Shown: piece after piece, positions 7,583-63,472 of the stretch
How the letters are laid out: each line of letters starts with the position of its first letter
Position numbering within the stretch: position 1 is the first letter of the stretch
NCBI GenBank assembly: GCA_950097015.1
Contig: CATNEN010000030.1
Span: 3,658,001 to 3,722,000, forward strand
DNA: 64,000 bases
Source: Macrostomum hystrix
Taxonomy: Eukaryota > Animalia > Platyhelminthes
Direction of reading: 5' to 3'
The notes under the pieces: model-generated
Database searches by the model: none
What the model saw: only the letters and a program-made list of their open reading frames with translations
Told to the model about the DNA's origin: nothing
Made by a program: the position numbers and the translations under genes

Positions 7583-10500
7583 TCAGGGTGGTCCGTCGGT
7601 CGAATCCGCCGCGCGATCTTCCTCGCCATAGGCTGGGAAGAAATCAGCTCGGCCGGTATCCCGGAGGAAGTGGGCGAGCTGTGGGATGTTCTCGGGCGAG
7701 CAGGCTTCGGCGAGAGTCGGTGCCGGCCCGAGATGTTTTAGCCTGGCCCGGGTGAAGGCCGGGCAGTGGCAGATGAAATGCTCAGCATTTTCGCGTCCGG
7801 AGCAGCAGAAGGGACACGTTTCCTCAGGCACGTGGCCTTGAAGGTAGCGGTGTCTGGTGAAGCAGCCATGTCCCGAAAGAGCCATAGTGACTGCTCTTAG
7901 GTCTCTGCGGTTAAGCCTGAGTAAGGCCTTACGCAGGCTACTAGAGGGGGTTGGCACCGCAGCCCTGGACTGGCGACAGTTCAGGGTGCTGGACCACCTC
8001 CTCCGGTGCTGGGTCTCCATCCAGCAGTTGATGCTGGAGTTGACAACTGAGATGGGGATCGGGGACTCCGGGCCCGGGCCCATCAGGGAGCTGGCTGCTC
8101 CAGCCTTAGCAAGCTGGTCCGCCATCTCATTCCCTGTGAACCCGGCATGCCCAGGGATCCATAGCAGCTCCACCTTGTTAGACTGCGCCAACCCGTTTAA
8201 CTGGGTGTTGCAGTCCAAGGTGGTTCTGGAGCGAGAGGTGCAGCGGCTGAGGGCCTTGAGGGCTGCTTGACTGTCGGAGTGAAAAAAGATCCTCCGACCA
8301 GCCAGCTGCCTCTGGCGCAGCTCAGCCGCACAGAAGCTGATGGCGAGCACTTCTAGAAAACGCTAGAGCTCTTGCCACAGTATTGGGAGTGGGTCCAGAG
8401 GACCTCACCACCCGAGGCGACGCACACTCCGAATCCCGATTTACCGTTCATCAGAGAGCCGTCAGTGTAACAGTGGACTGCCGGGTCATCCCAGCAGTCC
8501 TTTACCTCATTACGAGGGGAGATGCTGACTTTGTACCTGTGGCTCCGGAGTAAAGTGGCCGGGGCCCCGTCCGAAAGGATGGTGAGCCCTCCGCACTCGC
8601 CCAGAGTTTTCAGGCAGAGGTCAGAGTGAGGCAGAAGGGAGCGCTTCGAGAAGGCTCGCGAATTCTGGAAGGAGACACCCGCATCAAGAAGACGACGGGT
8701 GGACTTTGCTGCTTCCCCCTTGACGAAAATGTCAATGGGTGTAGCGTTGAGGAAAGCATTCATGCCTTCGAAGGGAGTGGAGGGTGGGGCGCCCAGCGTC
8801 ATACGACAGGCTCTGCCCTGCACCCTATAAAGCGCCTCCAGGTTTTTCTGGATGCCCATGGCGCTGGCCCAGATGAGGCCAGCGTAAGCGACGGACGGTC
8901 TAATGATCGCCGTGTAAATCCACCAAAGGTTCTTGGGGGTTAGCCCCCAGGTGGTGCCCACGGCACGCCTGACTTGCGCCAGTATGGCCAGGGCCCTCTT
9001 GGCCTTTGTGGTGATGTGTGGGGTCCAGTTAAGCCTATGGTCTAGCACGAGACCAAGGCACCGGACCTGCTTTTCCATGGCAATATTCTTGCCATAGAGA
9101 GTCAGAGGCTTAATGGTCCAGAGCAGTTTGCTGGTAAACATAACCGCAACGGTCTTGGACTCAGAGAGTCGGAGCCCGCATTGGTCCGCCCAGCGCACCG
9201 CCCTGTTGATAAAGCCCTGGATGAGGTCTCTGGTGGTTTCTGCCGAGGGGCCCGCGCAGATGGCGGTCACATCGTCGGCATATCCCACCTTCAGGACTGG
9301 GTCTGGACGAGTGCTTTTCAGCAGCTCATCCATGACGAGATTCCACAGCAGTGGGGTGAGGACGCCGCCTTGGGGCCCTCCTTTTAGGACAGGTGCCGAG
9401 AGCAGCCTTCCTTCGAGGTGGGCCACCACGTGGCGATGCCGGATCATGTACATGACCCAGCGAACGAGGTGGGGGTGAGTGGCCCTGGAGACCAGGGCCT
9501 CCTCAAAAGCTTCGAAAACAACGTTATCGAAGGCCCCCTCAATGTCTAGGAAGACAGCCAGGGCAAAACCGCTGCCCAGCACTGCCTTCTCGAGAGTCTC
9601 CACGATGCAGTGGAGGGCGCTCTCCGTGGACCGGCCCGCCCGAAAGGCGTGCTGGTTTGGGGAGAGCGGGGCCCGCCCTAGCTCTACAGTAAGAAGGCGC
9701 CAAAGCACCAGTCTTTCCATGAGCTTGAGGCAGGTGGAAGTCAAGCTTATCGGGCGATAGGACTTGACCGAGCGATAGTCGCCTTTGGCGGGCTTCGGGA
9801 TGAAGACGACCCGGGCTTCGTGCCACAGCGCTGGTACATAGCCCAGCACGATGCAGGCCCGTAGAAGTCTGCAGAGGAGATGGAGGAAGCGGCCATTTTT
9901 GACCGCTTCATGCAAAAAGGCCGGATAAATACCATCTGGCCCAGGTGCTTTGAAAGGGTTGAATGACTTTGCCGCGCGAACGATGCGGTCATTCGTGACG
10001 AGTGACTGAGCCAGGCCCTGACCTCCACGTGAGTGGTCGTCTGGGCCAAAGTGCGCCGGTACACTCGGGAAGAAATGCCCTAGCATAAGCTCGAGCGTTT
10101 CCTCCGGGCGCTCCGTGATCGAGCCGTCTGGCTTTTTGATCGATGAGAGCTTGGAGAAGCGGTCGTTGGTGAGCGCCTTTACCACGCGGGCCGTGGGCCG
10201 CGAGCCCTCAAGCCCTTCGCAGTATTGCCGCCACTTGTCCGCTTTTGCCCTTCTGACCCGGCCCTTAAACTCATGGATGGCGCGAGTATAGGCCTCTTTG
10301 TCATCAGGGTCGTGCGAGATTTTCAGCCTCCTCTGGAGAGCCTTTGCTCGGCGTCTCAGGACTCCGAGCTCGGGGTTCCACCAGGGGGCCGATTTTTTGC
10401 CTTTGTAGGCTTTGAGCGGGCAAGCCATTTCGTAGGCCTCTGTGATGGCGCCGCCCAGCAGGGCAGCCACTCCATCTAGGTCCTGCGTGGTTGCCATGGC

Positions 10501-11283
10501 CATGGAGGGGTCGGAATCCCGAAGGCCCTCATGCAGCTTTTGGCTGAACACGGGCCAGTCGGTGTTTCTGACATTACGCCTCCAGATAGGCTTTTGCTTC
10601 TTATCGGGGGTACCGATGTTGAAGCGAATGAAGCGGTGGTCCGAGAGCGAGCTTTCGGTCTCCCACACCTCCCACCCCAGCACCCTTGGGAGGATGCCGG
10701 GTGAGGCCAGGGTGACGTCAAGCACCTCAGCCCACCGCCCATTGTCGAACGTGGGCGTGTTGCCCACATTGCAGAAGTTAAGAGGCGTGCCGCTAACGAA
10801 GGCCAGGAGCTCTTCGCCGCGGTCATTGATTTTTGAGCTACCCCAGTGGGTGTGATGCGAGTTTGCATCTCCCGCGAGGAGCAGCTCAAAATTTCGTGCC
10901 CTGGCGAAATCACAGAGGGCGACGAGGGTATCGCTGACCACGGGGGCGTCGCCTGCCAGGTAGGCGGATGCCACGAGGGTCAACTTGTTGGGCACAATGT
11001 GTGCAGATTGGATGACGCAGATGTCCCCGTTAGAGAGATCGGGTCTCATCCACGCATTTAAGGCTTTTGCAGCATAGATCAGTGATCTAGGGCGGACAGA
11101 GTCTGCCATGCAGAAGCAGTCATAGCCAGCAGGAATGTTACTTGGCTTGTTTTTTGATAACCAGGGCTCCTGCACAAGTACAAGGCCCGGCATCGTGCGC
11201 TCTGTCGTGCGCATCAAATTGACTGATGCTGCCACGCAGTGCTGGGTGTTAACTTGCAGACATGATATTCCGGGGATCATCAT
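7583..11283 (-). pseudogene. LINE ORF2 (APE-RT-RNase H-zinc finger), broken by a stop/frameshift at ~8350
   Basis: 976-aa ORF ends SSSVF* and the 255-aa ORF 7583-8350 resumes VLAIS in another frame; the related copy at 60481 reads SSSVFQNEVLAIS uninterrupted. Confidence 0.9.
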
Positions 11284-11295
11284 GCAGGCAGAGGT

Positions 11296-12844
11296 CTACT
11301 TGGAGGGGGACTCAGCCAGAAGGCGGTCCTCCTCCTCCGGGTCGATGTCGGTAGCCATGGGCTCCTCCGTGCCCCGGCCCCGAGCCAGAGGCGGGAACTC
11401 GACGGGGTCAGCCGCCCAGTCCCCACCCCCGGCCCTGAGCCCAGGCCCAGAGTCACCCTCAACCGGTGCCAACACCGCACCCTGGGCCGTGGGAGGGGCG
11501 CTCGAAGGGCCCTGCTCGATGGAGCTGGGCACCTTAGAGGCCTCCCCCGTAGCCCTTGGTTGCGGCGCCTGCCCCCGGTGGGCCACCGCGCATCTCAGCG
11601 CGCAGCTGGGCCATCCTGGCGGTTCGCACCACCTCGGAGGCCCGCTGGAGAAGGCCCCGGCGCTTTGTGATGCGCGCGGGGCGACGCTCAGAGCTGCCAG
11701 CGATGGCACGCTCTGGCCTTTTTTGGCGAGACGACTGGGCCCTGCCCCCAGTCCCAACCTCGGGGTCCGAGGACCCTTCAGTGGCCGGTACGGTGGTGGG
11801 CCCGGTCTGACCTCGAGATTTATCTGCCTCGAAGGCGAAGATTTTGGTCTTCCACAGACCGATGCAGATGTTGGCGCCATCTGGGTAACGGCGTGTCCAT
11901 TGCTCGGACAGGCCCAGAATGGCGGTAAACCCGGTGCCATCGGGGCGCAGGATCGTGCGGTGCACGATCAGGCCCGCTGTCGGCAGCTCCCGGTTCATCG
12001 CGATGAGGCCCATGCGGAGGTCCTCAGCGCTGGTGACGACACTTTTCGCCGGGACGAAAATGCGGTGTCGCTTGGTCTTTGGTGGCTCGTTCTCCCGGAG
12101 GAAGTCGAGGCCAGCCGCCCAGCTCTGCGTGGGCAGCAACTCAAGGAGCCGCCGCCCTGATTCCGCGTCGCCGGGCCAGACGACGAAGCACGATTCCCTG
12201 GTAGCGCTTGCGCCGACCGCCAGGGGCTCGCCCTTCAGTTGGAGTTGCCACAGCATAGCATCTATGTTGCGGCAAATGTTGCTGAGCTGTTCGCTGCTCA
12301 GCCTTTTTCCGTCTCTGCCGGTGATGACAACGGCAGGTTGCCTACGTGCGATGGCGGCGTAGGTGGCATGTGGTCCCGGGCCCTGTCCGGTGGCGACCCC
12401 ACCCTCGGGATCAGCGTCGGCGGTGGGCACAGGGCCCTCTGCCTCCGCTTCTCCTTCAGGCCGAGCCGCCGTCCGGATGGGCGCCGGGACCTCCTTGGCC
12501 CGCGACCCTGGCCTCGGGGCGTCGTGGGCTCCGCCCCGTGCAGGAGCCTGGGCAGGAGGCGCAAGGCCCCCCGCCCCAGCCCCCGCCCTAGGCAGAGCCC
12601 CTTCGGCCCCTCTGGTCTGGGCCCGGTCCTCGGTCGATGGAGCCGGCTTGCCGTGGGCCATTAAGCGCCTACGACGCTTTGCCGCTCCAGAGGTTGAGGA
12701 GCGCTTAGCGCCCCGGTCATCGCGCGAGTTGGGCAGCGCGGTATTTGTGGCGGTCGCGGGGCCAGCTAGCCCGGGCGCCGCAGCGTGTATGGCCTCGGGC
12801 ACCATGGTGTCCTCGGCCGGAGCAGTTGGTAGGCTGGAAGCCAT
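11296..12844 (-). CDS. LINE ORF1 (DUF4780-like, no CCHC knuckle), probably frameshifted near 11550
   Basis: ATG at 12844 opens a 436-aa frame to 11534. An overlapping frame continues to 11296 and ends EEEDRLLAESPSK* 13 nt before the ORF2 ATG. The domain label is from recalled similarity to LOA/R1 ORF1. Confidence 0.7.
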
Positions 12845-13078
12845 TTGAAAGCTGCAATGAGGAGAGGGGCTTCCTGTAGACACAGGCAGGAATAACCCGC
12901 TCAGCCGCGATCCCAAAGCTGAGCGGGGGCAGCCAAAAAAGACAAGTTACAACCCGGGGTGGGATGCCAGGACCACCGGGAGGAACCGTAGGAGGCCAGA
13001 CTACTCCCTGGTCAAGCGTCCATCAGCACGGTCAACACTGGGACATTAGAGGGCGCTATTTGGCCAGCGCCGAGGCCT

Positions 13079-13420
13079 GCGGACTGGCCGCATACCCTGT
13101 TAAGGTCAAAGGGTGACACCTTTCCCTCAGAGCCGAAGCCAGAGGTACCTGATCACGCACAGGTGCACGAAACGCTGCGGACAGGCCGCATACCCTGTTA
13201 AGGTCAAAGGGTGACACCTTTCCCTCAGAGCCGTAGCCAGAGGTACCTGATCACGCACAGGTGCACGAACGCTGCGGACTGGCCGCATACCCTGTTAAGG
13301 TCAAAGGGTGACACCTTTTCCTCAGAGCCGTAGCCAGAGGTACCTGATCACGCACAGGTGCACGAAAGCTGCGGACTGGCCGCATACCCTGTTAAGGTCA
13401 AAGGGTGACACCTTTCCCTC
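13079..13420 (-). repeat. ~97-bp tandem monomers (3 full + 1 partial) in the LINE 5'UTR
   Basis: Units start at ~13079, 13177, 13274 and 13370 (GCGGACTGGCCGCATACCCTGTTAAGGTCAAAGGGTGACACC...), nearly identical. Confidence 0.95.
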
Positions 13421-14079
13421 CAAACGGGGCTAGAGGTACCCAGTTAGGCCGGAGGCCCTGGATGGGTCGTCCAGCGCTGTTGCCCATTCTGTCCGGCTGC
13501 CCTAGGGTCAGCCTTGAACACTCGCGGGACGTGTACCCATGGGTCAGCTGACGGGACAACGTGGAGAGGATTCCTTCACCCGGAGGCACAGGTCTCCTTC
13601 CTGCCAAACCTGCTCAAAAAACGACTGCAGGTGTGAGGCATCGCAGACCTTAGCCCGTAGGCCTGGTCTGACTCATACCACACAGGCATTGTGTCCCGCC
13701 GGTGCGAGCGATATTTTGACCATATGCTATGGTTCAAATTTTATTGGCTCGTATTGCGCGTTCAACGAGTCCGTGCAGACAATTTTCGCAGGAAAAAATA
13801 TGAATATGAGAACAACAAGCAAAAAAGCGGAACAAATACGACTCATGTCGTGCAGCGTATCAGTCCAACAAAACGTGGTGAACACAGATGCCCCGTCACG
13901 TATTCCTACTAATTATTGATATTGATCGTGCAATTTGCGCACTGGCAGTTAGCGAACACTGCAGCATTGGTATTCTCACGAACAGTTGTTGTCTCGTGGC
14001 TGATGATGCTTTTGCTGCTACTCAAGACGCAAGTACCACTGCTACTGCGCGTAGTTTTAACGTAGCCCCAACAGTAGTT

Positions 14080-18071: not shown

Positions 18072-21000
18072 ATGTCACTTTTTCAAGGCCCGGGCCTTGC
18101 AATCCTGGTGCTTCTACTAAGCACAGTTTGTCTAGCCAATAAGCAGCATCAGCAGCAGCAGCAGCAGCCTCATCAGCTGGATCCAGCAGCCGTCCGAGCT
18201 GTGCTGAGCACCGCCATGCGCTGCCAGAACCTGCCGCAGCTGCACGCAACGGTGGTGCACCGTGGCGTGCAGCTGCACAGCTTCCGGCTTCAGCTGCAGT
18301 CAGATGGCTCCGTCACCGACATCGCGGACACCTCCGTGCTGCTACCGCTGGCTTCAATCAGCAAGGGCATGTTCTCAACAGTTTTGCCCATTGTGCAGCA
18401 GCAGCTGAGGGAAGACAAAGCTGACCCGAATTTCGAGTGAGCCATTGAGCATCTTCAGTATAACTTTTGATAGCTGTCTATTTTTGACAAATTCACAAGT
18501 GTACCATAAGTACACTCGAATACCACCAATAGTACCAGAAACACACTCGAATACTACCAATAGTACCAGAAACACACTCGAATACTACCAATAGTACCAG
18601 AAACACACTCGAATACTACCAATAGTACTAGAAACACACTCGAATACTACCAATAGTACCAGAAACACACTCGAATACTACCAATAGTACCAGAAACACA
18701 CACTCGAATACTACCACTAGTACCAGAAACACACTCGAATACTACCAATAGTACCAGAAACACACACTCGAATACTACCACTAGTACCAGAAACACACTC
18801 GAATACTACCAATAGTACTAGAAACACACTCGAATACTACCAATAGTACCAGAAACACACACTCGAATACTACCAATAGTACCAGAAACACACTCTAATA
18901 CTACCAATAGTACTAGAAACACACTCGAATACTACCAATAGTACCAGAAACACACTCGAATACTACCTATAGTACTAGAAACACACTCGAATACTACCAC
19001 TAGTACCAGAAACACACTCGAATACTACCAATAGTACCAGAAACACACTCTAATACTACCAATAGTACCAGAAACACACTCGAATACTACCAATAGTACC
19101 AGAAACACACTCGAATACTACCAATAGTACCAGAAACACACTCGAATACTACCAATAGTACCAGAAACACACTCGAATACTACCAATAGTACCAGAATCA
19201 CACTCGAATACTACCGTTCGGACCAGATCGGTTGTTTAGCTGCAGATCGCTTAGCGTGTTTGCACTTCGCACAATGGTCCCTGAGTTCGATTCCACAGTG
19301 AGGCCACATTCATTTGGGGCGCAGCTGCGGAGAGAAGGCTTGGGGGATTTTCGTGAAATTTTCGCCCTTGACGGCCAACCTTCTAGGCACATAGAGAGTG
19401 TACTCGTACACCTGCTTGTCGATGAGAGAAACAGGGCACATGTACACACCTGTATGAGTGTGTGCATACGCACAGTATCTGTGTGCGTGTGTGCTTAGGT
19501 GTCAGCGCGATGGGCAGTTTTGTCTCTTGCGGGCTGTGAGTTTCCTGCCGCTAAAGGTTGTATCTGTGCCCAGAACCGTCCTGCAATTATTATTAATTAA
19601 CCGATCAACCCATTTACACGTACATAGGAATACTACCATGAAAAATCACTATCCAAATGGATCCTTACCAACAGAGCTGCTAAAAATCGGTCAACCGTCT
19701 AACATTCCAGCCTGCTGACAACCCCAATCAAGAAGCTGCTGGGCGACGATAACTTTTGGTTCCTAGACCACATCCGCACTGATGCGGTGACAATTGAGGA
19801 CCTGACCAGCCACACCACCGGCCTGAGCCGGCATGACGCGCTGTCCCTCTGGTCGGGCATCAGGACCAAGGCTGAGCTGGCTCAACGCACTGGTCGCTTC
19901 AGCGCCACCGGGACATTCCGAGGCTCCTATATCTATAACAACCTGGTCTGGACCATTGCTGACATGACTGTGGAGCGCCTGACTGGCCAGAACTTCACCA
20001 CCTACATGCGCAGGTTTCTATGGCAACGGCTGGGCATGACGGGCACAGTTGGCAGCTCAGAGATCGACTCGCGCAATTTGGTCTCCAAGCTGCTGCGAGT
20101 GCCCAAGAGCTTCGGCTCGAGTTGGTCTGCCTTCGAGCGAACCGAATTGGAGAGGTTTGTGACAGGCGGGTTGCCTCACTTATATTCGCGCCTAAATCTT
20201 GAACCCTGATTGCACCAATAATAAAATAATTGCTGGAGGGCTGCGGGCAATGGCACGTCTTTTGGGGACAGTAGACCCGCAGCCAGCGAGGAGGCAATTC
20301 TGGCCATTCCGCTGAGTCTTGAGCATACACTCACAGATACCGAACGTGGGCACACACTCACACAGGTGTGTACATCTGCCCTGACTTTCTCATCGTCAGG
20401 CAGTGTGCACTTCCTTGAGGGCCCTGAATTTTGTAAATTCCACGACAAGCCTCCTCTGCGCCCCAAATAAATGGGGCCTCGCCGCGGAATCGAGCCCACG
20501 GACCTTGGCACGAGAGGCATACGCGTGCCACCGACCCCCAAAGCTGTATGGCTGCATTAAAAAAAAGCATCGCAGAATAAACAAAAAAAAATTGAGACTA
20601 AAACAGCACATTTAAGGTCCAAACTTTTGTTTGCTGGAGAGATGCACTGCCAGAGGCAAAGCTGCTGCTATTGCGTATCGCTTACAAAGGCTGCGTATAG
20701 CTGTTCAGTCCATGGACAATGAGACCGACAGACCCACCCTGTAGTTTCTACCCCAGCTAAATCCTGGTACCCATTTTACAGCTGGCTAAACGGAAGCTAA
20801 CAATTAATTGACTCGATCAAGGACACAAATAGTTTCTCCTCGGCTGAGATTCGAGCTCAGGACCTCCCGGCTTAGACTCCTGAGCTTTAACCACTGGGCT
20901 AGGATCTTACAGGGCTTAGATCCGATTCCTATCAATGACCACTAAACTAGTATTGTAAGTGAACCTTTTTGTCCTAGCTGGTAATTCTGTTGGGTGGGTT

Positions 21001-40100: not shown

Positions 40101-43100
40101 ATTTATTTCCTGTCCACACAATCCAGGTATCGTCCATCAATCGCGTCCTACGCAACGTGAACCAGGACGCGCAGAAGAAGCTGATGCTGTCGAGCGTCTA
40201 CGATCGGTTCAACATGCGCATGGCCGCCGCAGCCGCAGCCAGCCAGCATCCGCACTGGGGCACGGCGCCGTGGTACTTCAGCGCCGCGCCAGCTTTCGCT
40301 GCGGCCACCAGTGCCGACCAAAGTCAGCAGCAGCAGCAGCAACAGCATCTGCCGCAGCCACAACCGGCTCACTCACAGCACCATCACCAGGCGTCGGGCT
40401 ATGCTAGTGCTCTGACTCACGCTCACGCAGCCGCTGCCGCCGCTGCCGCTGCCGCTGCCGCCGCTGCCGCTGCAGCTGCCGAAGAAGGCAAACAAGGTAG
40501 TAATAATAATAATTGCAGGAGGGCTGCGGGCAATGGCACATCATTTGGTGACACTAGACTCGCAGCTAGCGAGGAGGCAATTCTGCGCATTTCGCTGACT
40601 CCTGAGCACACACGCACACAGACACCTTACGCAGGCACACGCTCACACAGGTGTGTACATCTGCCCTGACTTTCTCATCGTCAGGAAGTGTACACTTTCA
40701 TTGTACTTTGGAGGTTGGCCCTCAAGACCCCAAACCTTCTCTCCGTGGCTGCGCTCCAAATAAATGTGGCCTCGCCGCGGAATCGAGCTCAGGGACCTTG
40801 TGCAAGGTGCGAGAGACAAACATGTTAACCGCTCTGCCACTAACCCCTTAAACGAGAGTTGTCTATGGTAGAAAGGGTCGCGCCTAGTCAATTGAAGATA
40901 TCGTAAAAGAGGAGCCAAGGGCCCCGAACCTCGTATCAACATATCAATAAAGAATTTAAAGAAACTTTTATTTTCAGGCTATGTCTCCGCAGCTGCAGCA
41001 GCCGCGGCCGCAGCTGAGGCCCTGGCAGAGCCAGGGGGTGTCAGCGGGCAGCAGGCGGCAGTGCCAGACAGCAGCTGCTGGTCGGACAGCGAAGACATCA
41101 AAGGCCGGAGCGTTTCGGTTAGAAACACCAACGATGGAGGGGGAGAGTCTAGCGATGAAGATGAGGACGATCTCGAAGACGAGGATGAATCAGGCGGCCG
41201 GCAGCGACTGCAGCAACAGTCATCGTCGAACCAGCAGCACCAGAAGCGATCGCTTCAAAGGCATCGGATCTCATTTTCGCAGCAGCAGTTGGACATTCTG
41301 GAAGCTGGTGAGTGGCAGCTTCTCTCTGCTCCGCGACTTCTCACAAACTGGTTCAAATGAGACGGCTTGTTGCAGTGATATGTGTGTCTTGCTCAAGGAC
41401 GCTAATTGTTCTTGTTCGAGATTCGAACTCCCGACCTCTCACTTAGGAGTCCAAAGCTCTAACCGCTAGACTTTAGTCTTGTGAATGTTAAAAAATCAAG
41501 GAAATATTCTTTGTCCCTCGTGATGATTCGCAGAGTTCAGCCGCAGCCACTACCCGGATCCGTACTCACGCGAGGACCTGGCCAGACGAGCCTGTGTTTC
41601 AGAGTCGCGCATTCAAATCTGGTTTTCAAATCGGCGCGCAAAATGGCGCCGCGAGGAGGGCATCAAAGACGGGGCCGAGCCGGTCGACGGAGCCAGCGGA
41701 AGCGGCGGTGGCGGCGCAGCAGCTGGCGGAGCGAAGAATCTTAGAAAGCTGACTGCGGTTGCCGAGGCAACTTCAACTGGCGAACAGCCACCGGTGCCGC
41801 CGCCACCGTCGCAGCCGCAGCTGAACCACAGACTCAGCCTGGCCGCCAGACAGTACCAGCAGAACATGGCCGCCGCTGCCTTCAGCATTGGTCACGTTCC
41901 ATTTGGCATGTACCCAACAGCCCAGCCGACTGATGCTATTGTACAGCAGCAGCAGTCACAGCAGACTCAGCCTGTGAGCCATCAGTCCCAGGATCTGCAG
42001 TCTGGAACAGGCAGATACGCTAGCGGCCAGGACCAGTCCATTGCGAATCAGCAGCCCCAGCTGAGCGGAGCCAGCGGCGGATATTTTGACATTTCAAAAG
42101 CGGCCGCCACTTATTCACTGCTGGGTGCCGGGCCGCACGCCCCGGGTGCACACCACGCCGCCGCTGCCGCCGCCGTTTATGGCGGATTCGCGCCAGCTGC
42201 TTCTACTCATAGTAGTGAGTGCTTTTGTTTAAATGTTATTGTATTTTATTGGCTTGCGTTTTTATACAACGCCATTTAGGTCTGGAATGAAATAAATAGA
42301 CCAAATTAGTTAGGAGAGACAGGTGAGAGATGAGACACGTGAGAGATGAGACAAGTGAGAGATGAGACAAGTGAGAGATGAGACACGTGAGAGATGAGAC
42401 AGGTGAGAGATGAGACAGGTAAGAGATGAGGCAGGTGAGAGATGAGACAGACGAGAGATGAGACAGATGAGAGATGAGACAGGTGAGAGATGAGACAGGT
42501 GAGAGATGAGACAGGTAAGAGATGAGGCAGGTGAGAGATGAGACAGGTGAGAGATGGACAGGTGAGAGATAATAAATGAGACAGGTGAGAGATGAGACAG
42601 GTGAGAGATAAGACAGGTGCGAGATGAGACAGGTGAGAGATGAGACAGGTGAGAGATGAGACAGGTGAGAGATGAGACAGGTGAGAGATGAGACAGGTGA
42701 GAGATGAGACAGATGAGAGATGAGACAGGTGAGAGATGAGACAGATGAGAGATGAGACAGATGAGAGATGAGACAGGTGAGAGATAAGACAGGTGCGAGA
42801 TGAGACAGGTGAGAGATGAGACAGGTGAGAGATGAGACAGGTGAGAGATGAGACAGGTGAGAGATGAGACAGGTGAGAGATGAGACAGGTGAGAGATGGG
42901 ACAGGGTAGACTTTGGTATAGGCCAGATAGGCCAGGACTAGGAGTATAGATAAATGTGATTGCCGACTGCATTTGGCTGAAGGCCCAGGGTTCTAGACAG
43001 GGAAGCCTCCCACATGTAGGATAGAAGCTTACAAATTCGAGTACCTAGTGCAGAAGATTGCATTTCTAAGAAAGCCATTAACGATGCGACCTGTTTCCAC

Positions 43101-44336: not shown

Positions 44337-47300
44337 TCACACTGGCGTGACGGTGGTGAAGGCGGCGTCGCCAGTCAAGCCGAGTCCCGTCCAGTCGGAC
44401 AGCTTGGCCAGCACGGGAAACCAGACTGCGTCGATCTGCAGGATCATTCGCAGGGTTCGCACAGTGTAGAAGACGTCGCGAAATTCGTTAACTTCGTTCA
44501 TTGCGCTAACCAGCAGGGCGATGATGAAGTTCAGGACTAGCACGACGAACACCAGGACGAAGATGATGTGTGCGATGCTGGCCTCGGAGTGGCCGACGCT
44601 GTCGTCCCGGCTGACCAGCTCCAGCGGTCTCTCAGTGTTCAGACTGAGGCTGAAGGCGTAGAACACCTTCGGGATTGAAGACATTTTTTGTAGACATGGA
44701 ATTTGCGAGTGTTGCTTTCCATACCAAAATCGGACAATTTTCCGCCTGTGAAATTCCCCCAAGCATTTTTGACAAACTCTAAGAGAGAAATAAAAAATTC
44801 TGTACTCAAGACTCGCAACTTGAAGGTCGGGGGCTCGATTTTTAACTACAACGGAACAATATTCCTTATCAAGACACTTTAATCTGCATTGCTTCAGTTC
44901 ACTCTGCTGGTAAATGGGTACTAGAATTAGGGTGGGGCTGTGGCGTCTCCCCAGTCCATGGACTGAACAGCCGCGCAATAGCTGCACAGCTATCCGGATT
45001 ATTGAAGGATTATTTATTTAATAAAATATTAGTTTTCAAAAATCAACTGAAATCATGAATCAAAGTGAGAAATTTTAAGGCTATGAAAGCATCCCATCTC
45101 CCATCCATCCCATCTGAAAAAGGTTAATTATCTAAATTAGTTGCGGTGGAAATTCTGGGTGAGTGGCAGAGCGGTCTAATGCATTTTCCGCTCGCACCAG
45201 GGTCCCTGAGCTCGATTCCGAGGCGAGGCCACATTTATTTGGGGCGCAGCCGCGGAGAGAACGCTTGGGGGGCTTGTCGTGCAATTTACTCCAATAAGGA
45301 CCAACCTCCAAGGCGCTGTGAAATTGTACACTGCCTGACCATGAGAAAGTCAGAGCAGATGTACACACCTGTGTGAGTGTGTGCTCAGGAGTCAGCGTCA
45401 CCAAATTATGTGCCGTTGCCCGCAGACCTCCTGCAATTAATTTTTTAGTATGTTTTTTAGGATGGGGATGAAATTTGAGTAGGTTTGGCGGCCCCCAGTC
45501 CGTGGATCGAACAGCTTCACAATGCGTTACGCAGTCTCGGGTAATTCCTATCAATTTATCAAACTGCGCAATCAGCGGCACAATGCCCAAGTCAGTTGGC
45601 GCTCACCTGGCAAAGCCAGCTGGAGTGGAACTCTTGCAGCGACAATAGCGCGTCGTCGCCAACTCCGCCGTGGATTCTGATTGACGCGAAGCTGACGGAC
45701 GAGAAAATCCTGGAGAAGATGCTCAGCACAACCAAGTAGATGGCGGCGAAGTGTAGAAAGCGCGAGAACATGCAGCGGAATGCGTACACAACCGGGCCAA
45801 GGTGTGGTATCATCTCCAGGTAATACACGATGAGGATGTGCAGGAACAGGTAGCACAGGTGGAAGATTATCCTTAATGACAGGAACACGTGGGCAACGCG
45901 CTCCTGTGGAAGTGTTCAGTATTTCATATAATAATTTAGATTGGCAATGCAACACACGAGTCGTTTCAAAATAATCCCACGATATTCCTAGCATTTCAGA
46001 TGAAATTATCAGGTTTAAGAATTGGGGTCCTGCATTTTGACCCAAGTCTCTCGGAAGCCTTGGCTTAATTATTGATTCTTCGAGAACAGACTTGTTACAC
46101 AACGACTTTACAACAGCTGCCATCGTTAGCTGGGGTAGAAATTGGGGTCCATGGACTGAACAGTTGTACGCAGCCAATCGATACATCGTTGACACTCGCT
46201 GCATGAATTAGTCCAGCTGGGCTAGGTGTGATTTCTTCATCTTCTTTTTGTGAAATTAATTAAGTTTGTTTAATTTGCTATCAGGTCTAAGCTACGCAGA
46301 ATGCCAGAGAATTTTAAAGCAACAACTACCTCAGTGAGCAGCCGCTTAAAATGAAACAGAAAGGAGAACAGGGGGCTCTTCGGACACGGCAGGTAGGAAA
46401 TCCGCACGGAGCACAGAATGAAGCAGAACAGGATGAGGCCGAAGCGACAGACGCTGGCCAGCCAATCCTGGTCCATCCATCCGGTTTCCATGACAACTAG
46501 GAACTTCTTGTAGGCTAGGCGACCGTCTCTGTTTAGGCGTCGCTTAGCAACCAGACGCTGAACGGAGCGCACAGTGTGCCACAGCAACAGGAAGATGCTC
46601 ACGGATATGTAGGCGATGCGAATCGTCGTGAAAATGTCCCCATTGTCCATCACGGGCGTCAGCAGAAGCGGGGCAATGTCGCTGCTGAGACGATCAGCTT
46701 CGGGCGCGACTGCAGCGTCTGTGTCGTTTTCCATCGTGATGTTTGCTTTACTAAAATTTTTAAATGTGTGCTTAATACCCTTGCTGTTTGGTAGTCTTCA
46801 ATTTCTTAACTGTGGAAAGATCACGCTATTTTGTCCACTGGGCAAGGACCACAGGGGTATTTCAAATACCCACTGCCTAGTTCACGAAAACTCCCTAATC
46901 GAATTTCAGATTTTCGTGAAAGTTCACCTCATGAATCACAATTTTCCGCCCTTTACGATGAACAAATTTTAAAAGCCGTTAGACGTAAGCATCTTGTCCA
47001 AGATGCTTACGTGGTATTTCAACTGTCTTACTTCTGTTGAGCAATGCTAAGCACTTACAACCAGTTTTTGCCGCTCAGTCGAATCTTCTGCCTGCCAACA
47101 TTCTCCAGAACTTTAAGGTCGAACACGACAACGCTGTAGAAGGAGACCCGCATCACCTCCTGGCTGAAGCACATCTGCGTTGACGTGGTCGCCTGCGGCA
47201 TCTGCATCTCCAATGGGATCTGCATCATGACGACAAGGGAGAGCCAGAACAGCGCCACCGGGATGCAGATGGCGATGTTCCTGCGCCACAGCTGGCCAAT

Positions 47301-51449: not shown

Positions 51450-51668
51450 ATTGCAGGAGGGCTGCGGGCAATCTCACACCAGTTGGTGACACTAGACTCG
51501 CAGCCAGCGAGGAGGCAATTCTGCCCATTTTGCTGACTCCTGAGCACACACGCACTCAGATGCCGTACGCAGGCACACGCTCACACAGGTGTGTACATCT
51601 GCAATGACAGTCTCATCGTCAGGCAGTGTACAATCTCACTGTGTCCTGGAGGTTGGCCCTTAAGGGCA
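51450..51668 (-). mobile_element. SINE family A, 5'-truncated
   Basis: Body and LINE-like 3' domain present; tRNA head absent. Confidence 0.85.
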
Positions 51669-51923
51669 TAAATACTAATCATATTTCCATCACCACCATC
51701 GCCATGTTCAGTCACAACAAAGGATAAAGCAATAAAAAAATTAAAACAATCCATGATTCCTTCAACACAATATCAGTTAGCAATGCCAAATAGGATGCCA
51801 GCCGAGAAATCAAATCTGTTTATTTCTAAGAAATCAGTTCGCCTAACCATTGGCGCCATTTTCCACTGAATTCCCTGAAAATTATATTAAATGTTTCGTC
51901 AATAGTTCTCGTAGTTCAGTGCT

Positions 51924-54296: not shown

Positions 54297-54720
54297 AGGG
54301 ACTTCCCCCCCCTGAAAATTTTTTGTGCTGCACACGAACAGAACAACGCAAGCACACGAAACTCAAGAACACGGGCCAACTTTTTGTTGCGCATCTTCTG
54401 AAACAATAATGAAATCGCCAGCTCTTCAGATCGTCTAGATATTCAATGTCTCTGGCCGAAGGTCGGATTTTTCCCATAAGCGCTAGTATATTTCATTTCA
54501 CCCCTATACACGAATTAGCACTGCGCCTGAGTGCGGCCTTGCAAGGCATTCAAAATTTATCAGCATGTCACCCGAATGTGCCTGCATCATCTCCGTCTTC
54601 GGTGGTCACCTAACTATATCTAGACGGATTTGCTGGACCTTCAAGGGCAACAACAGGCGGAAATAGGTTACTATGGACACCCTGATGCAAATTTTCACTG
54701 ATAAAGCCAAAACACTAGAC
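54297..54720. repeat. Dispersed ~430-bp repeat, inverted copy at 23090-23525
   Basis: Reverse-complement match to 23090-23525. Confidence 0.85.
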
Positions 54721-55594: not shown

Positions 55595-55685
55595 CTGCAA
55601 GGGAGAAATCCCAAAGTCGTGAATGACGAAGGTCACAGAGCAAGTGAATTTTGACTTACATCTCTCATTATAATTATTATACTCG

Positions 55686-56050
55686 TAATTGCAGGAGGGC
55701 TGCGGGCAATGGCACATGATTTGGTGACACTAGACCCGCAGCCAGCGAGGAGGCAATTCTGCCCATTTCGCTGACTCCTGAGTACACACACACTCAGATA
55801 CTGTACGCAGGCACACACACAGGTGTGTACATCTGCACTGACTTTCTCATCGTCAGGCAGTGTACACTTTCACTGTCGCATTGGAAGTTGGCCCTCAAGG
55901 GCGTAAATTGCACGACAAGCCACCAAGCCTTCTCTCCGCGGCTGCGCCCTAAATGAATGTGGCCTCGCCGCGGAATCGAACTCAGGGACCGTGGTGCGAG
56001 AGGTAAACGCGAGAGGTAAACTCCCCCGATCCCCGACTGCCACTGACCCC
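55686..56050 (-). mobile_element. tRNA-derived SINE family A
   Basis: A box GGTCAGTGGCAG, B box GAGTTCGATTCC, intact 3' structure. Confidence 0.9.
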
Positions 56051-56644
56051 CGACTTACCTCTCTCAGTCAATATTTCAAGTGAATATAGTTTAGTTTGTA
56101 ATTTTTACTTTGTTCAGTTGGCTTTTTTTCGAGTATTATTCTTCAATTAATTTTCGCATACAGAATAAATAACAATGGGAGATTTGCCTGCAAAACAGCA
56201 GCAATTACTCGTGGATTAATTAAGCAAAATCATTATCAATATGCCCCACCAGTAGGGCAGCACAAAAATCTTTGAGCGGTAAAATTCTAGAGAGTGCAGG
56301 TAAGTCAGCTAGGCTCTGACACAAGCTTTTATCTGCCCCCCTAGCCGTATCAAAGGGAGTTCCGATCAAGCATAAAAATCGATCGATCGATTCCCGCTGC
56401 GTGCGCACAGATTTTTGTTTCAGAGGCTCACTTTGAACGCGGCGCGAGTTGCTTCCGCGCGTCTTGTCTGTTTTCGGGCGCAAAGAAGTCGCATATTTCT
56501 CGAAGCCACCTGACAGTCACTGGTTCCAAACCTGCCTTTCCTCTCCTTGAGCTCACCTGAACTCAACCCAGTGCTAAGTGTGCTCAGTGTTCGCCTCTCC
56601 CCCAATTTTTCCTTTGCTCATATTTGAACAGTTCTACTTTGAAA

Positions 56645-57826: not shown

Positions 57827-60800
57827 TCAGTACAGCCAATGTACTGGCAGCCACTGATGCTCAGTGGTGAGAGAGTCCAATATAGCCTCCAACTGCTCGT
57901 AGCAGCTGTCAAAATTATCGCAGATTAGCACAGAATCGAACAGGTGCCGAAAGGTGCGCTCGATGTGAATGGATTGCTGAATTGCCTTGCGGAAATCTTC
58001 ATCCTGTTGTTTGCGGAAAAATTGCATTTGCATAACGAGCTAGGAACCTTAACTGTAGGATTTGTAACTCAAGATAGGGATTGGGAGGCTGGGATCTCAT
58101 CAGATAAGATGAAGGGATTGGGAGGCTGGGATCTCATCAGATAAGATGAAGGGATTGGGAGGCTGGGATCTCATCAGAGAAGATGAAGGGATTGGGAGGC
58201 TGGGATCTCATCAGAGAAGATGAAGGGATTGGGAGGCTGGGATCTCATTACAGGAAATGAAGGATTGGGAGGCTGTGATCTCATCACAGGAGATGAAGGG
58301 ATTGGGAGGCTGGGATCTCATCAGAGGAAATGAAGGGATTGGGAGGCTGTGATCTCATCACAGGAGATGAAGGGATTGGGAGGCTGGGATCTCATCAGAG
58401 GAAATGAAGGGATTGGGAGGCTGTGATCTCATCACAGGAGATGAAGGGATCGGAAAGCTGGGATCTCATCACAGGAGATGAAGGGATTGGGAGACTGGGA
58501 TTCTTATAAGAGAAGATGAAGGGATCGGGAGGCTGGGATCTCATCATAGGAGATGAAGGGATCGGGAGTCTAGGATTCTTATAAGAGAAGATGAAGGGAT
58601 CGGGAAGCTGGGATCTCATCACAGGAGATGAAGGGATTGGGAGACTGGGATTCTTATAAGAGAAGATGAAGGGATCGGGAGTCTAGGATTCTTATAAGAG
58701 AAGATGAAGGGATCGGGAAGCTGGGATCTCATCACAGGAAATGAAGGGATTGGGAGACTGGGATTCTTATAAGAGAAGATGAAGGGATTGGGAGACTGGG
58801 ATTCTTATAAGAGAAGATGAAGGGATCGGGAGGCTAGGATTCTTATAAGAGAAGATGAAGGGATCGGGAGACTAGGATTCTTATAAGAGAAGATGAAGGG
58901 ATCGGGAGGCTAGGATTCTTATAAGAGAAGATGAAGGGATTGGGAGACTAGGATTCTTATAAGAGAAGATGAAGGGATCGGGAGGCTGGGATTCTTATAA
59001 GAGAAGATGAAGGGATCGGGAGGCTAGGATTCTTATAAGAGAAGATGAAGGGATTGGGAGACTAGGATTCTTATAAGAGAAGATGAAGGGATCGGGAGGC
59101 TAGGATTCTTATAAGAGAAGATGAAGGGATCGGGAGAGATTGGTGCTCTGGCGCCTCCTCTCTGTGGAGCTGAAAAATATGCCACTAAGCGGCAATCAAC
59201 ACGCCTTTCGGTCGGGACGTTCCACCGAAAGCGCTCTCCACGCTCTGGTGGACGCTCTGGAAAAGGCCGTCCTCGGGAACGGCTTTGCCCTGAGCATCTT
59301 CCTGGATATTGACGGGGCCTTCGACAACGTTCTCTTCGAGGCGTTTGACAGGGCCCTACGTATGCGGCACACGCATTCGCATCTTAGGAGGTGGATCATG
59401 TACATGGTCCGCCACCGCACTGCTACGGCACACCTTCTTGGACACCAGCGGACGGTCACTGTCTGCAAAGGTTGCCCACAAGGCGGCGTCCTCTCACCAG
59501 TTCTCTGGAACATGGTTATCGACGAGCTCTTACGAGACTCTCAGCCAGACCCCATCCTAAAGGTCGGCTATGCGGATGATGTTACGGCAGTGGCATCTGG
59601 CCCGGTACCAGAGGCCCTCCGAGACCTTCTGCAAAACTTTATCAACAACGCCGAAAGATGGGCAACTCGCTGCGGTCTGAAGCTCTCCGAGTCTAAGACA
59701 GCGGCGATCATGTTCACCAGCAAAAACAAATGGCATATTCGCCCCCTGCAGCTGTATGGAAAGGACATCACCTTCCAGATGCAAACTAAATGCCTGGGCA
59801 TAACGCTCGATCACAGGCTCAGCTGGACTCCTCATGTCCATGCCAAAGCCAAAAAGGCCTTTGCGATCCTGGCGCAGCTGCGCAGGGCGGTGGGCAACAC
59901 GTGGGGTCTCACCCCCAAACGCCTATGGTGGATCTACACTGCTATGGTCAGGCCGGCTGTCTCGTACGCCGGACTGATCTGGGCTAGTGCCCTTCAGCTT
60001 AAGACCTGCCATGAGACTCTTCGGAGAGTGCAAGGTCGCGCATGTCGGACGATCATGAGCGCCCCGCCATCCGCCCCCTTCGATGGCCTCAACGCCTTCT
60101 TGAACATCCTCCCGCTCGATATCTTTATCCGCGGGGAGGCGGCAAAAACCGCCCGGCGTCTCCTTGATGCCGGTGTGCGCTTCGTCCCCCAACGAGCGGC
60201 AGCGAAGCGAAAGCTCCTGCCGCACACGGACCTTTGCCTGAGAGACTTGGGTGCGAGCAACGGAATCAATGTCCTTACGGACGGTGAACCGTGCTCGCTC
60301 AACCTCCTTCAGCGCTTTAAGGTTCTCATCCCCACCAGGGACCAAGTTAGCGACCACTGGAACACCCAGGAGGTCCACTGCTACACGGACGGATCCATGA
60401 AGGATGGCTCCGCTGGCTTCGGGGTCTGTATCCTTATCAACGGACGTGTTGTCGCCACACACGCCCAACACACTGGAAAATCCTCGAGCGTTTTCCAGAA
60501 CGAGGTCCTGGCCATCAGCTCCTGCGCTGCGGAGTTGAATGAGAAAAACATCTCAGGCAGGACTATCATCTTTCACTCGGACAGTCAGGCTGCTCTGCAA
60601 GCCCTCTGTCACACCACCACAACCTCCCGGACAGTCTCCGACTGTGTCCGGCAGCTCAATAACCTGGCCGGTAAGAATACCGTCAGACTTCAGTGGATAC
60701 CAGGGCACGCCGGTTTCCCTGGTAACGAGCTTGCTGACCACCTGGCCAAGCAGGGAGGAGCCAGCTCTGCGCCGGGCCCCTCCCCCCCGGCTCCGATTCC

Positions 60801-63472
60801 GAGCACCGTCATTTATCGTCAGATTAATGATTGGACCGCCAACCTCCATCTTACCCGGTGGAGAAGCACCACTAACTGCCGCCAATCCAAAGCGGCAGTT
60901 CCAGTGCCATCCGCTCGGCTCCGGAAGGTCCTTCTGAACCAGACCCGGAAGGACATCCGGGCCCTCACCATGACCCTCACGGGCCATGGCTGCTACGCCA
61001 GACACTGTTTCCTCCGTGGAGACCTCCGGAGTGAGCTGTGCCCTTTCTGCAACCTTGAGGACGAGGATGCCCTGCACTTCGTCTGCCACTGCCCTTTCTT
61101 CACCAGAGAGAGGCTCAATCACCTCGGACCAAACCCATCAATGGACGATGTTTGCAGATCCGAGAACATCCCGCGGCTCGTCCGGTTCCTAAGGGCTACC
61201 AGACGAGCCTCTTTCTTCCCCAGCGAGGAACAAGCTGCAGGAAGGACCGAACACGGACCTCCCTGACTGGCCCCGCGCCATCGGCCGATTGCGGGTCTTT
61301 CAGGGATTAGCGGAATGGGCGACTCCCGCCTCCCCGCTGCGTCCGTCGGACCGCCCTGCAGTTAAGTCAAGTAAGTCAAGGGATCGGGAGGCTGGGATTC
61401 TTATAAGAGAAGATGAAGGGATCGGGAGGCTAGGATTCTTATAAGAGAAGATGAAGGGATCGGGAGGCTAGGATTCTTATAAGAGAAGATGAAGGGATCG
61501 GGAGGCTAGGATTCTTATAAGAGAAGATGAAGGGATTGGAAGGCTAGGATTCTTATAAGAGAAGATGAAGGGATCGGGAGGCTGGGATTCTTATAAGAGA
61601 AGATGAAGGGATCGGGAGGCTAGGATTCTTATAAGAGAAGATGAAGGGATTGGGAGGCTAGGATTCTTATAAGAGAAGATGAAGGGATCGGGAGGCTAGG
61701 ATTCTTATAAGAGAAGATGAAGGGATTGGGAGGCTAGGATTCTTATAAGAGAAGATGAAGGGATCGGGAGACTAGGATTCTTATAAGAGAAGATGAAGGG
61801 ATCGGGATGCTGGGATTCTTATAAGAGAAGATGAAGGGATTGGGAGGCTAGGATTCTTATAAGAGAAGATGAAGGGATCGGGAGGCTGGGATCTCATCAT
61901 AGGAGATGAAGGGATCGGGAGTCTAGGATTCTTATAAGAGAAGATGAAGGGATCGGGAAGCTGGGATCTCATCACAGGAGATGAAGGGATTGGGAGACTG
62001 GGATTCTTATAAGAGAAGATGAAGGGATCGGGAAGCTGGGATCTCATCACAGGAGATGAAGGGATTGGGAGACTGGGATTCTTATAAGAGAAGATGAAGG
62101 GATCGGGAGACTGGGATTCTTATAAGAGAAGATGAATGGATCGGAAAGCTGGGATCTCATCACAGGAGATGAAGGGATTGGGAGACTGGGATTCTTATAA
62201 GAGAAGATGAAGGGATCGGGAGGCTGGGATCTCATCACAGGAGATGAAGGGATCGGAGGCTGGGATCTCATCACAGGAGATGAAGGGATCGGAGGCTGGG
62301 ATCTCAAGATAGGAAATGAAGGGACTGTGAAGCAAGGAGGAACAATGGTTCCTACATTGCCAAGGCCACTCACCCGCTTGAAATTGTTGGTGAGTCCCAA
62401 TGAGCTGCCCAGCTCGTACATTGACTTCATGCAGTCAAAGCTGGGGGCGGCGATGAACACAACGTAGGGCTTGAACTCGGCCGTGCACACCTGGCGCGCT
62501 CGCTCCGGGGAGCAGTCAACCAGCAGGGTGCGGTCCTGCGGCAAATGCGGGATATTCGAAATGATAATTCGCATACTACTTGTCAGTAAGTAGCCTTAAA
62601 TAAGTCAATCAGAAACTCATTCAATAATTTAGTCTTTCAGCAGTGTACACCTTAATTTACATTTTTATTTTGTAGCAACGATTGACCCAATTTGCACTGC
62701 ATAACTGCTTTAGCTAAAAAGTGGCTTCTGCCGCGGAAGCGAACTTTCGGCCACTCATTGGGTTCAATCACCCAGGAACTAGAAATGATATTCTATAGAC
62801 AGATTTTATATAAGCGCTATGTACCTGTTTATCCATGGATCGCAGAGTGTCGATCTTCACGCCGTACAGGAAGCCGTTGAGCTGGCCGTACTCCAGGTAG
62901 GCGCCTTTGCGAACATCCACCTCCATTTCTTGCTGGCCGGCGAATAGGTATCTCTCGCCGCTAACCTCGCCGTCTCTAGGCGGCCGACTAGTGTGGGGAA
63001 TGGGCCTGGCGTAGCGCTCCGGATGGTGCTTGATCAGCTGACTGATAAGTGAGGCCTTGCCGACTCCCGGGGCGCCCAGCAGCAGCACAAGGGAGCGGCG
63101 GAAGGGTGGCACGCGGGCCACCTCCTGGTAGATGTTAAGATCGGAACGCTGGAATGACTGCGCCACATTGGCCTTGTAGGCCACGCGAACAGTCTTCTTC
63201 TTTTTGGCTAAGCCCAGGCCCATCACTTTGTAGTTAATAGCATCCTTGTCCGGTGTCGACTGCAAGAAGGCCGTCCGACGCTCCTGCAGCGTGAGTGAAG
63301 GGATCAGACCGGCCCGCCCAGCATTATCCCATCGCCTGGCCTGCCACCAGTTCGGATCCTCCTGGGAGAGCACCTGGAGCACGTCGCTGACGGTGAATTT
63401 TAATCCGGCTTCGCGACACGGGATTAGGCCGTCGTACTGGGGATCGTAGGAGAATAGGGCCTTCACATAGGT
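57827..63472 (-). CDS. MAGUK p55/MPP-subfamily protein, 3' part (SH3-HOOK-GUK); exons 63472-62825, 62535-62374, 58003-57827
   Basis: YVKALFSYDP..IPCREAGLKF..DVLQVLSQEDPNWWQA..GLIPS (SH3); LLGAPGVG, PHTSRPPR..YLEYG..YG (GUK); FKPYVVFIAAP; QWLPVHWLY* terminus; phase-0 junctions. Upstream exons were not found in the window. Confidence 0.92.
58075..62320. repeat. 37/38-bp minisatellite filling the last MAGUK intron, split by a LINE
   Basis: Units GGGATCTCATCACAGGAGATGAAGGGATTGGGAGGCT and GGGATTCTTATAAGAGAAGATGAAGGGATCGGGAGGCT at 58075-59136 and 61381-62320. Confidence 0.95.
59137..61380 (+). mobile_element. 5'-truncated R1/LOA-like LINE (RT-RNase H-CCHC, uninterrupted 708-aa frame)
   Basis: RT (FLDIDGAFD, CPQGGVLSP, YADD), RNase H (YTDGS, WIPGHAG), CPFC..HFVCHC; tail TAAGTCAAGTAAGTCAAG; 13-bp TSD AAGGGATCGGGAG (59124-59136 / 61378-61390). 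Confidence 0.95.

What the first reader, a model, noticed from the sequence alone, without database searches (positions are those of the whole stretch)
55686..55785. A tRNA-SINE shares a covariation-supported 3' RNA structure with both R1/LOA-like LINE families in the window
Seen, reading each element's sense strand. LINE1 3'UTR (7550->7480): CAGGG-GT-TAGCGA-TAT-GGGCGG-catcag-CCGCCT-CC-TCGCTG-[hairpin]-CCCTG. LINE2 (61301-61360): CAGGG-AT-TAGCGG-AAT-GGGCG-actcc-CGCCT-CC-CCGCTG-[GTCC/GGAC hairpin]-CCCTG. SINE-A (55785->55686): CAGGAG-T-CAGCGA-AAT-GGGCA-gaat-TGCCT-CC-TCGCTG-[GCTGCGGG/CCCGCAGC hairpin]-CTCCTG. All three give the same three-way junction with a WAT/CC internal loop. Three pairs swap compensatorily: A-U/G-C in the lower stem, G-C/A-U in the upper stem and G-C/A-U in the closing stem. 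Established: many SINEs borrow a LINE 3' end for recognition by the LINE RT (e.g. L2, CR1 and RTE partners). Inference: SINE-A (six copies here) is mobilised by these RNase H-bearing R1/LOA-like LINEs through this structure. I do not recall such a partnership or structure being described, but could not check.
Basis: partly seen in the sequence, partly recalled or inferred. Interest (0 to 1): 0.85.

Follow-up and report, generated by a model that had tools for sequence, protein, structure and literature searches.

The report
SINE borrows LOA-like LINE 3' hairpin
A short jumping-DNA family in a flatworm carries a folded RNA tag copied from the end of a group of larger jumping genes, most likely so that their enzyme copies it; the core of the tag is conserved across distant relatives, but in the larger genes it sits in a different, longer fold than first proposed.

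Summary
The motifs and three compensatory swaps are in the sequence. A covariance model built only from LINE 3' ends returns the six SINE copies as its six best non-training hits in the window (best E 8e-9). The shared core (helix, 3x2 loop, G.U-closed helix; P2) occurs just before the tail in about ten deeply diverged LOA-like LINE lineages, with tree-corrected covariation (23 double changes vs 7.3 expected).

That fold covaries better and is 9.5-16 kcal/mol more stable; only P2 is common to both folds.

Mobilisation by a LOA-like LINE is inferred, not shown. These two families are not singled out, and the tails differ (ATT vs AAGTC). The host is probably Macrostomum. Tail borrowing is well known; I found no LOA partner or this structure in the papers searched, but could not check Repbase, Dfam or SINEBase. 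The scan noted similar pairs on other DNA of this genome.

The parts
55668..56051 (-). SINE-A copy of the finding: tRNA-like head, unique body, TG-rich stretch, LINE-derived 3' structure, degenerate (ATT)n tail
   Evidence: 15-bp TSD with one mismatch at 56066-56052 and 55667-55653
55972..56051 (-). Head with Pol III A-box-like and B-box (55983->55972) motifs; A box degenerate in this copy, clearer in the copies at 40.8 and 45.2 kb
   Evidence: no ARAGORN or Rfam tRNA hit
55743..55773 (-). P2: 6-bp helix, AAU/CC 3x2 internal loop, G.U-closed 5-bp helix; the element shared with LOA-like LINEs in every fold
55692..55780 (-). SINE three-way junction (fold B): 6-bp closing helix 55780-55775 / 55697-55692, P2, and a long P3 arm 55742-55699
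40503..40847 (-). SINE-A copy, full length (ends approximate)
   Evidence: model R2 E 1.6e-5
51450..51673 (-). SINE-A copy, 5'-truncated
   Evidence: R2 E 3e-5
20220..20538 (-). SINE-A copy, older (81% to window majority sequence)
   Evidence: R2 E 0.012
45157..45439 (+). SINE-A copy with an internal deletion that removes P2
   Evidence: R2 E 0.072
19234..19595 (+). SINE-A copy, most diverged (79%)
   Evidence: R2 E 0.024
7462..13709 (-). LINE1: full-length LOA-like LINE. ORF2 11283->7583 (APE, RT, RNase H, C-terminal CCHC-type finger) with one in-frame stop at 8355-8353; (AAGTC/AAGT)n tail; 14-bp TSD
13483..13709 (-). HDV-like ribozyme fold whose first base is the first base of LINE1
   Evidence: hand-parsed P1, P2, P3, P4; no Rfam hit
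7482..7612 (-). LINE1 extended 3' fold A: PA 7612-7606 / 7488-7482, Pc, stop-codon hairpin P0 (stop 7585-7583), P2.
59137..61377 (+). LINE2: 5'-truncated LOA-like LINE (RT part, RNase H, CCHC finger) inserted in a 38-bp minisatellite; 13-bp TSD read from the repeat phase
61234..61362 (+). LINE2 extended 3' fold A (PA 5' strand 61234-61241, stop 61264-61266).

Best explanation
SINE-A is a tRNA-type SINE whose last ~90 nt derive from the 3' UTR of an RNase H-bearing LOA-like LINE of the flatworm-type subgroup (shown by sequence and structure). The recognition signal is most likely P2 (3x2 internal loop next to a G.U pair) together with a helix that ends just before the simple-repeat tail (inferred). 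In the close LINE families that terminal helix is formed with the last ORF2 codons (fold A). The SINE captured only the part from CAGG onward, so it closes on itself (fold B, the topology also seen in distant LOA-like LINEs) and has strengthened that fold with a 6-bp closing helix and a long P3. A Pol III transcript would then be bound in trans by a LOA-like ORF2 protein and inserted by target-primed reverse transcription (inferred from the known pathway). Which family does it is not resolved.
For: LINE-only model R2 finds all six SINE copies as top non-training hits. P2 is found in about ten deep lineages; 23 branches change both partners vs 7.3 +- 2.2 expected, 18 keep pairing, slid controls keep 0-2. 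19 of 20 excised 3' ends fold alone into the same junction. G.U intermediates exist for the swaps: L002 and 7-9% of SINE depth at 55768, and L093. Homology starts at CAGG and ends at the tail. TSDs are 13-15 bp in SINE and LINEs. The SINE is a high-copy dispersed repeat with defined ends. Fold A: PA 56/56 and Pc 40/40 cells paired, 8 pairs with two-sided changes.
Against: Tail units differ (ATT vs AAGTC/AAGT in all nine close families). No SINE transcript was shown (the one RNA-labelled run is a guess). A model from distant families alone does not detect the SINE or LINE1 and gives LINE2 only E 3.7. The SINE closing helix is lost in unrestricted whole-element folding. Motif-bearing loci were picked by eye, which inflates pairing statistics. 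Only 2 of 9 P2 pairs reach E < 0.01 individually.
Confidence: 0.7

Rival explanations
1. The LINE 3' end is a two-state switch. Fold A sequesters the stop codon and the terminus. ORF2 translation melts it and lets fold B, the RT-binding form, appear on the same RNA (cis preference). The SINE is a mimic locked near fold B.
For: One strand (RTCY after P2) has a complementary partner both upstream and downstream, and in L093 one change is compensated on both sides. B's P3 is 26/32 paired with 2 two-sided pairs. The 3' UTR alone gives B at P 0.49-0.77 in 5 of 8 families. B is the topology in distant families and stays stable there in context for most. All 5' strands of A lie in or at the end of ORF2.
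Against: Blocking a ribosome footprint (-15 to +13) does not yield B, because PA re-forms (P(B) <= 0.03). B's closing helix shows no two-sided change among LINEs. The ORF2-end pairing is absent in the L025 group.
Confidence: 0.2
2. One reading: SINE, LINE1 and LINE2 all use the same three-way junction B, and these two families are the SINE's partners.
For: The excised 3' ends fold into B. The SINE's A-U swap in the closing helix is compensated only in B. LINE1 is the closest block match, 32/38.
Against: B is 9.5-16.4 kcal/mol less stable than A in context, and the competing P0 hairpin is local. A covaries more (vs 113). Families from other samples match the SINE about as well. Tails differ.
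Confidence: 0.15
3. The LINE-derived 3' end is a relic. The SINE got it from a LOA-like LINE but now moves through a relaxed LINE that reads only the A/T-rich tail.
For: The tail unit differs from the close LINE families. The SINE P3 arm is much longer than any LINE P3.
Against: All differences between the SINE and the LINE majority in the closing helix and P2 keep pairing. The common variant at 55768 is a wobble. Nothing was put between the structure and the tail.
Confidence: 0.1
4. Chance or convergent resemblance between GC-rich hairpins.
For: A structure-only descriptor gives hundreds of hits in the window. Plain BLASTN of SINE against the LINEs is not significant (E 0.29).
Against: R2 E 8e-9 for the SINE, with all six copies ranked above background. 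Same terminal position before the tail. 0 chance matches in shuffles.
Confidence: 0.02

Closest known systems
Stringent SINE/LINE pairs with a shared 3' tail (58 pairs listed in PMC3747384; eel UnaSINE/UnaL2 as the tested case)
   Same: tRNA-type head plus a LINE-derived structured 3' end directly before a simple repeat
   Different: No LOA partner in that review (0 hits for the word). Tail repeats differ between SINE and LINE here. The element is a multi-helix junction, not a single hairpin.
Monocot L1 (LINE1-1_ZM) with ZmSINE2/3, as reviewed in PMC3747384
   Same: SINE and LINE 3' stems linked by compensatory changes
   Different: L1 clade and a single hairpin
Flambeau SINE of Dryas iulia (PMC6685494); Gecko/MosquI (I clade, PMC3747384); Nimb-partnered mollusc SINEs (PMC11481361)
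   Same: SINE tails taken from LINEs of the broader I/R1 grouping (grouping from my own knowledge)
   Different: Flambeau's R1 similarity is 'data not shown' with no structure given. None of these is LOA.
SART1 and R1Bm 3' UTR structures (R1 clade; cited in PMC3747384, full papers not held)
   Same: Closest LINE group with a 3' UTR shown to be needed for retrotransposition
   Different: I could not compare the structures. No SINE is involved.
LOA clade (LOA, TRIM, bilbo, Lian, CiLOA; PMC2790886)
   Same: APE, RT, RNase H downstream of RT, simple-repeat tail, HDV-like fold at the 5' end (PMC5786205 lists LOA among such clades)
   Different: No named LOA reference protein was available for a tree. 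A conserved 3' RNA element was not found described for the clade.

Membership tests
tRNA-derived SINE (SINE2) | [quoted passage not shown] | tested here: met
   A-box-like TGGCAGAGCGG and B box GTTCGATTCC in the copies. A strict automatic A+B scan listed none, so the A box is degenerate.
tRNA-derived SINE (SINE2) | Head traceable to a particular tRNA | tested here: inconclusive
   No ARAGORN or Rfam tRNA hit; tRNA origin is inferred from the boxes.
tRNA-derived SINE (SINE2) | Short, dispersed, many copies, common 3' end, simple tail, TSD | tested here: met
   About 350-380 nt, six copies in 64 kb, 492 contigs laid in one run with no depth on the immediate flanks, 15-bp TSD in the 55.7-kb copy; no clear TSD in most older copies.
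tRNA-derived SINE (SINE2) | Pol III transcript | not testable with these tools
   No certain RNA run.
Stringent SINE/LINE pair | SINE 3' end homologous to a LINE 3' end | tested here: met
Stringent SINE/LINE pair | Shared terminal repeat unit | tested here: not met
   ATT vs AAGTC/AAGT for LINE1, LINE2 and seven other close families. A LOA-like family with an ATT tail could not be sought genome-wide.
Stringent SINE/LINE pair | Overlapping activity periods | tested here: inconclusive
   SINE copies 79-94% to the window majority sequence; LINEs near intact. No genome-wide age profile.
Stringent SINE/LINE pair | LINE protein mobilises the SINE through the shared structure | not testable with these tools
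   Needs a trans-mobilisation assay.
LOA clade LINE | APE, RT, then RNase H in ORF2 | tested here: met
   PMC2790886
LOA clade LINE | RT groups with named LOA elements rather than R1 | tested here: inconclusive
   No named LOA protein among hits; one relative carries an automatic R1 name. The tree has no reference clades.
LOA clade LINE | HDV-like ribozyme at the 5' end (shared with R1, R2, R4, RTE, Ingi) | tested here: met
   Fold parsed at 13709->13483; cleavage not tested.
R1 clade LINE | Insertion at a specific repeated target (28S rDNA, telomere or similar) | tested here: not met
   LINE1 sits in unique DNA and LINE2 in a minisatellite; close relatives have unrelated flanks.
Bipartite non-autonomous LINE-type SINE (PMC5786205) | SINE body contains the LINE 5' end | tested here: not met
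   No match of the SINE body to LINE1, L001, L003 or L004 outside the 3' block.
SINE superfamilies with a conserved body (CORE, V, Deu, Meta, Nin and others) | Conserved central domain | not testable with these tools

The most novel reading that the evidence does not exclude
The 3' end of this LINE subgroup is a conserved two-state RNA spanning the ORF2 stop codon. Translation converts it from a closed fold (terminus paired with the last codons) to the RT-binding junction, giving cis preference, and the SINE escapes that control by carrying only the active fold.
Probability: 0.2. Interest if true: 0.8.

Novelty: new variant of a known kind. Interest (0 to 1): 0.5.

Why it matters
It adds a LOA-like clade to the LINE groups that appear to lend their tails to SINEs. 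It also defines a compact, covarying 3' RNA element (P2) shared across LOA-like LINEs whose ORF2 proteins are only 30-40% identical, and no Rfam family matched it. The two alternative folds in the flatworm-type subgroup give exact mutants for testing how a stringent LINE chooses its own RNA and how a SINE bypasses that choice. The basic phenomenon, tail borrowing, is ordinary.

Tried and rejected
Structure-only descriptor scan: too lax, hundreds of chance hits. Model R1 from 18 distant LINE ends: finds its own groups and some new ones but not the SINE or LINE1. Rfam and ARAGORN: nothing relevant. Motif scan of viral contigs: 28 matches, none with the structure, treated as chance. Homology of the SINE upstream of CAGG with the LINE stop-codon region: best p 0.02-0.04 uncorrected over 8 tests, rejected. 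Bipartite origin rejected. Ribosome-footprint folding did not produce fold B. General ORF2-end/terminus pairing in all LOA-like families: rejected for the L025 group, mixed for the L007 group. The PA register in my script and the P2 indices were off by one and were not used; searches give the right values. Pfam found nothing for ORF1. Literature searches found no LOA-SINE pair or this structure; the library lacks many subscription papers, and Repbase, Dfam and SINEBase were not available. The careful tree did not finish; the quick tree was used.

Full report
Setting. The window holds two RNase H-bearing LINEs. LINE1 runs 13709->7462 on the minus strand, is full length, has a 14-bp TSD and one in-frame stop in ORF2. 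LINE2 runs 59137-61377, is 5'-truncated and sits in a 38-bp minisatellite. They are 64% identical over 452 residues of ORF2. The best named relatives are Macrostomum lignano proteins, up to 75% identical, so the host is probably a Macrostomum flatworm (inference). SINE-A has six copies in the window, 79-94% identical to their majority sequence. It is a high-copy dispersed repeat: 492 contigs of one run lie on it, with no depth on the immediate flanks. The head has A- and B-box-like motifs, but no tRNA model recognises it, so tRNA origin is inferred.

Observation. The three quoted blocks and the three swaps are as described. The SINE 3' end folds into the stated junction with z about -5. To avoid circularity I built covariance model R2 from seven LINE families only: the two in the window and five from other samples at 55-64% protein identity. 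Its six best non-training hits in the window are the six SINE copies, E 8e-9 to 0.07. The homology is therefore real. It starts at CAGG and runs to the tail; upstream similarity is not significant.

How widespread the structure is. I fetched about 90 loci encoding related ORF2 proteins. About 50, including near-duplicates, show just before their simple-repeat tail a helix, a 3x2 internal loop and a helix usually opened by G.U (P2), followed by a variable hairpin and a closing helix. About 20 others with readable ends lack this form. The motif-bearing loci fall in roughly ten long branches of the protein tree. Nineteen of 20 excised ends fold on their own into the same junction. On the protein tree, both partners of a P2 pair change on the same branch 23 times against 7.3 +- 2.2 expected, and 18 of these keep pairing; slid controls keep 0-2. 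Seven of the top ten corrected column pairs out of 253 are predicted base pairs. R2 also finds the distant families L003, L019, L012 and L007 at E 2e-5 to 2e-4. Caveats: I chose motif-bearing loci by eye, only two pairs reach E < 0.01 singly, the tree is the quick one, and the reverse test failed, since a model from distant families does not detect the SINE or LINE1. The hosts of most loci are unknown. One lies in an assembly of Candidatus Erwinia dacicola and is probably host-insect contamination (inference).

Correction to the structure. When the last ORF2 codons are included, the eight close LINE families fold differently (fold A). The 3'-terminal CUGCAGC pairs with GCUGCAG about 30 nt before the stop (PA). 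The strand after P2 pairs with a segment about 10 nt before the stop (Pc). PA is paired in 56 of 56 cells and Pc in 40 of 40. Eight pairs of fold A change on both sides, including a U-A to G-C change in LINE1 at a synonymous codon position. B is 9.5-16.4 kcal/mol less stable in context. The PA partner is the best complement of the terminus among about 490 upstream windows in 6 of the 7 close families tested and in L003. P2 is identical in A and B. In most distant families B remains stable in context, so A looks derived.

The SINE lacks the ORF2-end strands. Its A-U swap in the closing helix is compensated only in B, and the helix is 6 bp. In folding of the majority sequence and the 55.7-kb copy, P2 forms with probability 1.0 in every setting. 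The closing helix forms at 0.8-0.98 with spans up to 150 nt, but is displaced in unrestricted folding by a pairing of the head with the P3 arm worth 4.9 kcal/mol. G.U intermediates of the swaps exist in L002, L093 and in 7-9% of SINE depth at position 55768.

Mechanism. Shown: homology, a conserved P2 with covariation, and two mutually exclusive folds for the LINE end. Inferred: ORF2 protein reads P2 and a helix ending next to the tail, and the SINE presents these in fold B and is inserted by target-primed reverse transcription. TSDs of 13-15 bp agree with this. The partner is not identified. LINE1 and LINE2 match the SINE block no better than families from other samples, and all nine close families end in AAGTC/AAGT repeats while the SINE ends in ATT. 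A switch between A and B during translation is possible, because one strand keeps two covarying partners, but a simple ribosome-footprint model did not produce B. I put it at 0.2.

Relation to known systems. Tail sharing is the textbook SINE strategy, and compensatory changes between SINE and LINE stems were reported for monocot L1 (PMC3747384). That review lists no LOA partner. An R1-like tail is mentioned without data for the Flambeau SINE (PMC6685494). The LINEs fit LOA by domain order (PMC2790886), lack of a fixed target and an HDV-like fold starting at base 1 of LINE1 (PMC5786205), but no named reference was available for a tree, so I call them LOA-like. No paper found describes this 3' element; the repeat databases could not be checked.

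Verdict. A real feature and a new variant of a known kind. Interest 0.5, mostly for the clade-wide P2 element and the alternative fold over the stop codon. Earlier unchecked notes of this scan report similar SINE-LINE ends on other DNA of this genome; they are not independent support.

Noticed in passing
window 13709->13483 (-): Complete HDV-like ribozyme fold (G.U first pair, P1-P4, C in J4/2) starting at the first base of LINE1; a 57-nt block of its long J1/2 is 84% identical in L001.
   Followed up: partly
window 13420->13077 (-): LINE1 5' UTR holds 3.5 copies of a 97-bp tandem repeat.
   Followed up: no
window 12916->11300 (-): LINE1 ORF1 region is split over two overlapping ORFs and has no Pfam hit or CCHC knuckle; the intact-looking 525-aa ORF1 of L001 also has none.
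   Followed up: partly
window 58076-62302: LINE2 is inserted into a 38-bp minisatellite, with a 13-bp TSD readable from the repeat phase.
   Followed up: partly
window 56066-56052 and 55667-55653 (-): The SINE's TSD ends in GTAAGTC, the same letters as the end of the LINE tails; probably chance.
   Followed up: no
window 15560-15700 (+): Fragment related to the SINE-A body without the LINE-like 3' end; a second family or a truncated old copy.
   Followed up: partly
SINE head vs P3 arm (56051-56038 and 55714-55704, -): The SINE's first ~12 nt are complementary to the 3' side of its P3 arm, giving an alternative end-to-end fold.
   Followed up: partly
window 23096-23520 and 54308-54718: Another interspersed repeat, two inverted copies 84% identical over 426 bp; not classified.
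   Followed up: no
L007, L009, L016, L070 just after the ORF2 stop: The first 8-9 nt of the 3' UTR are complementary to the element's terminus and start of the tail, an alternative pairing like fold A.
   Followed up: partly
window 24922-25959 (-), 39420-40160 (+), 62768-63607 (-): ORFs with RING finger, paired-box plus HTH (possibly transposase-related) and SH3 plus guanylate kinase domains.
   Followed up: no
L085-L090: LOA-like LINE fragments lie in contigs of prokaryotic assemblies (e.g. Candidatus Erwinia dacicola), most likely eukaryotic contamination.
   Followed up: no
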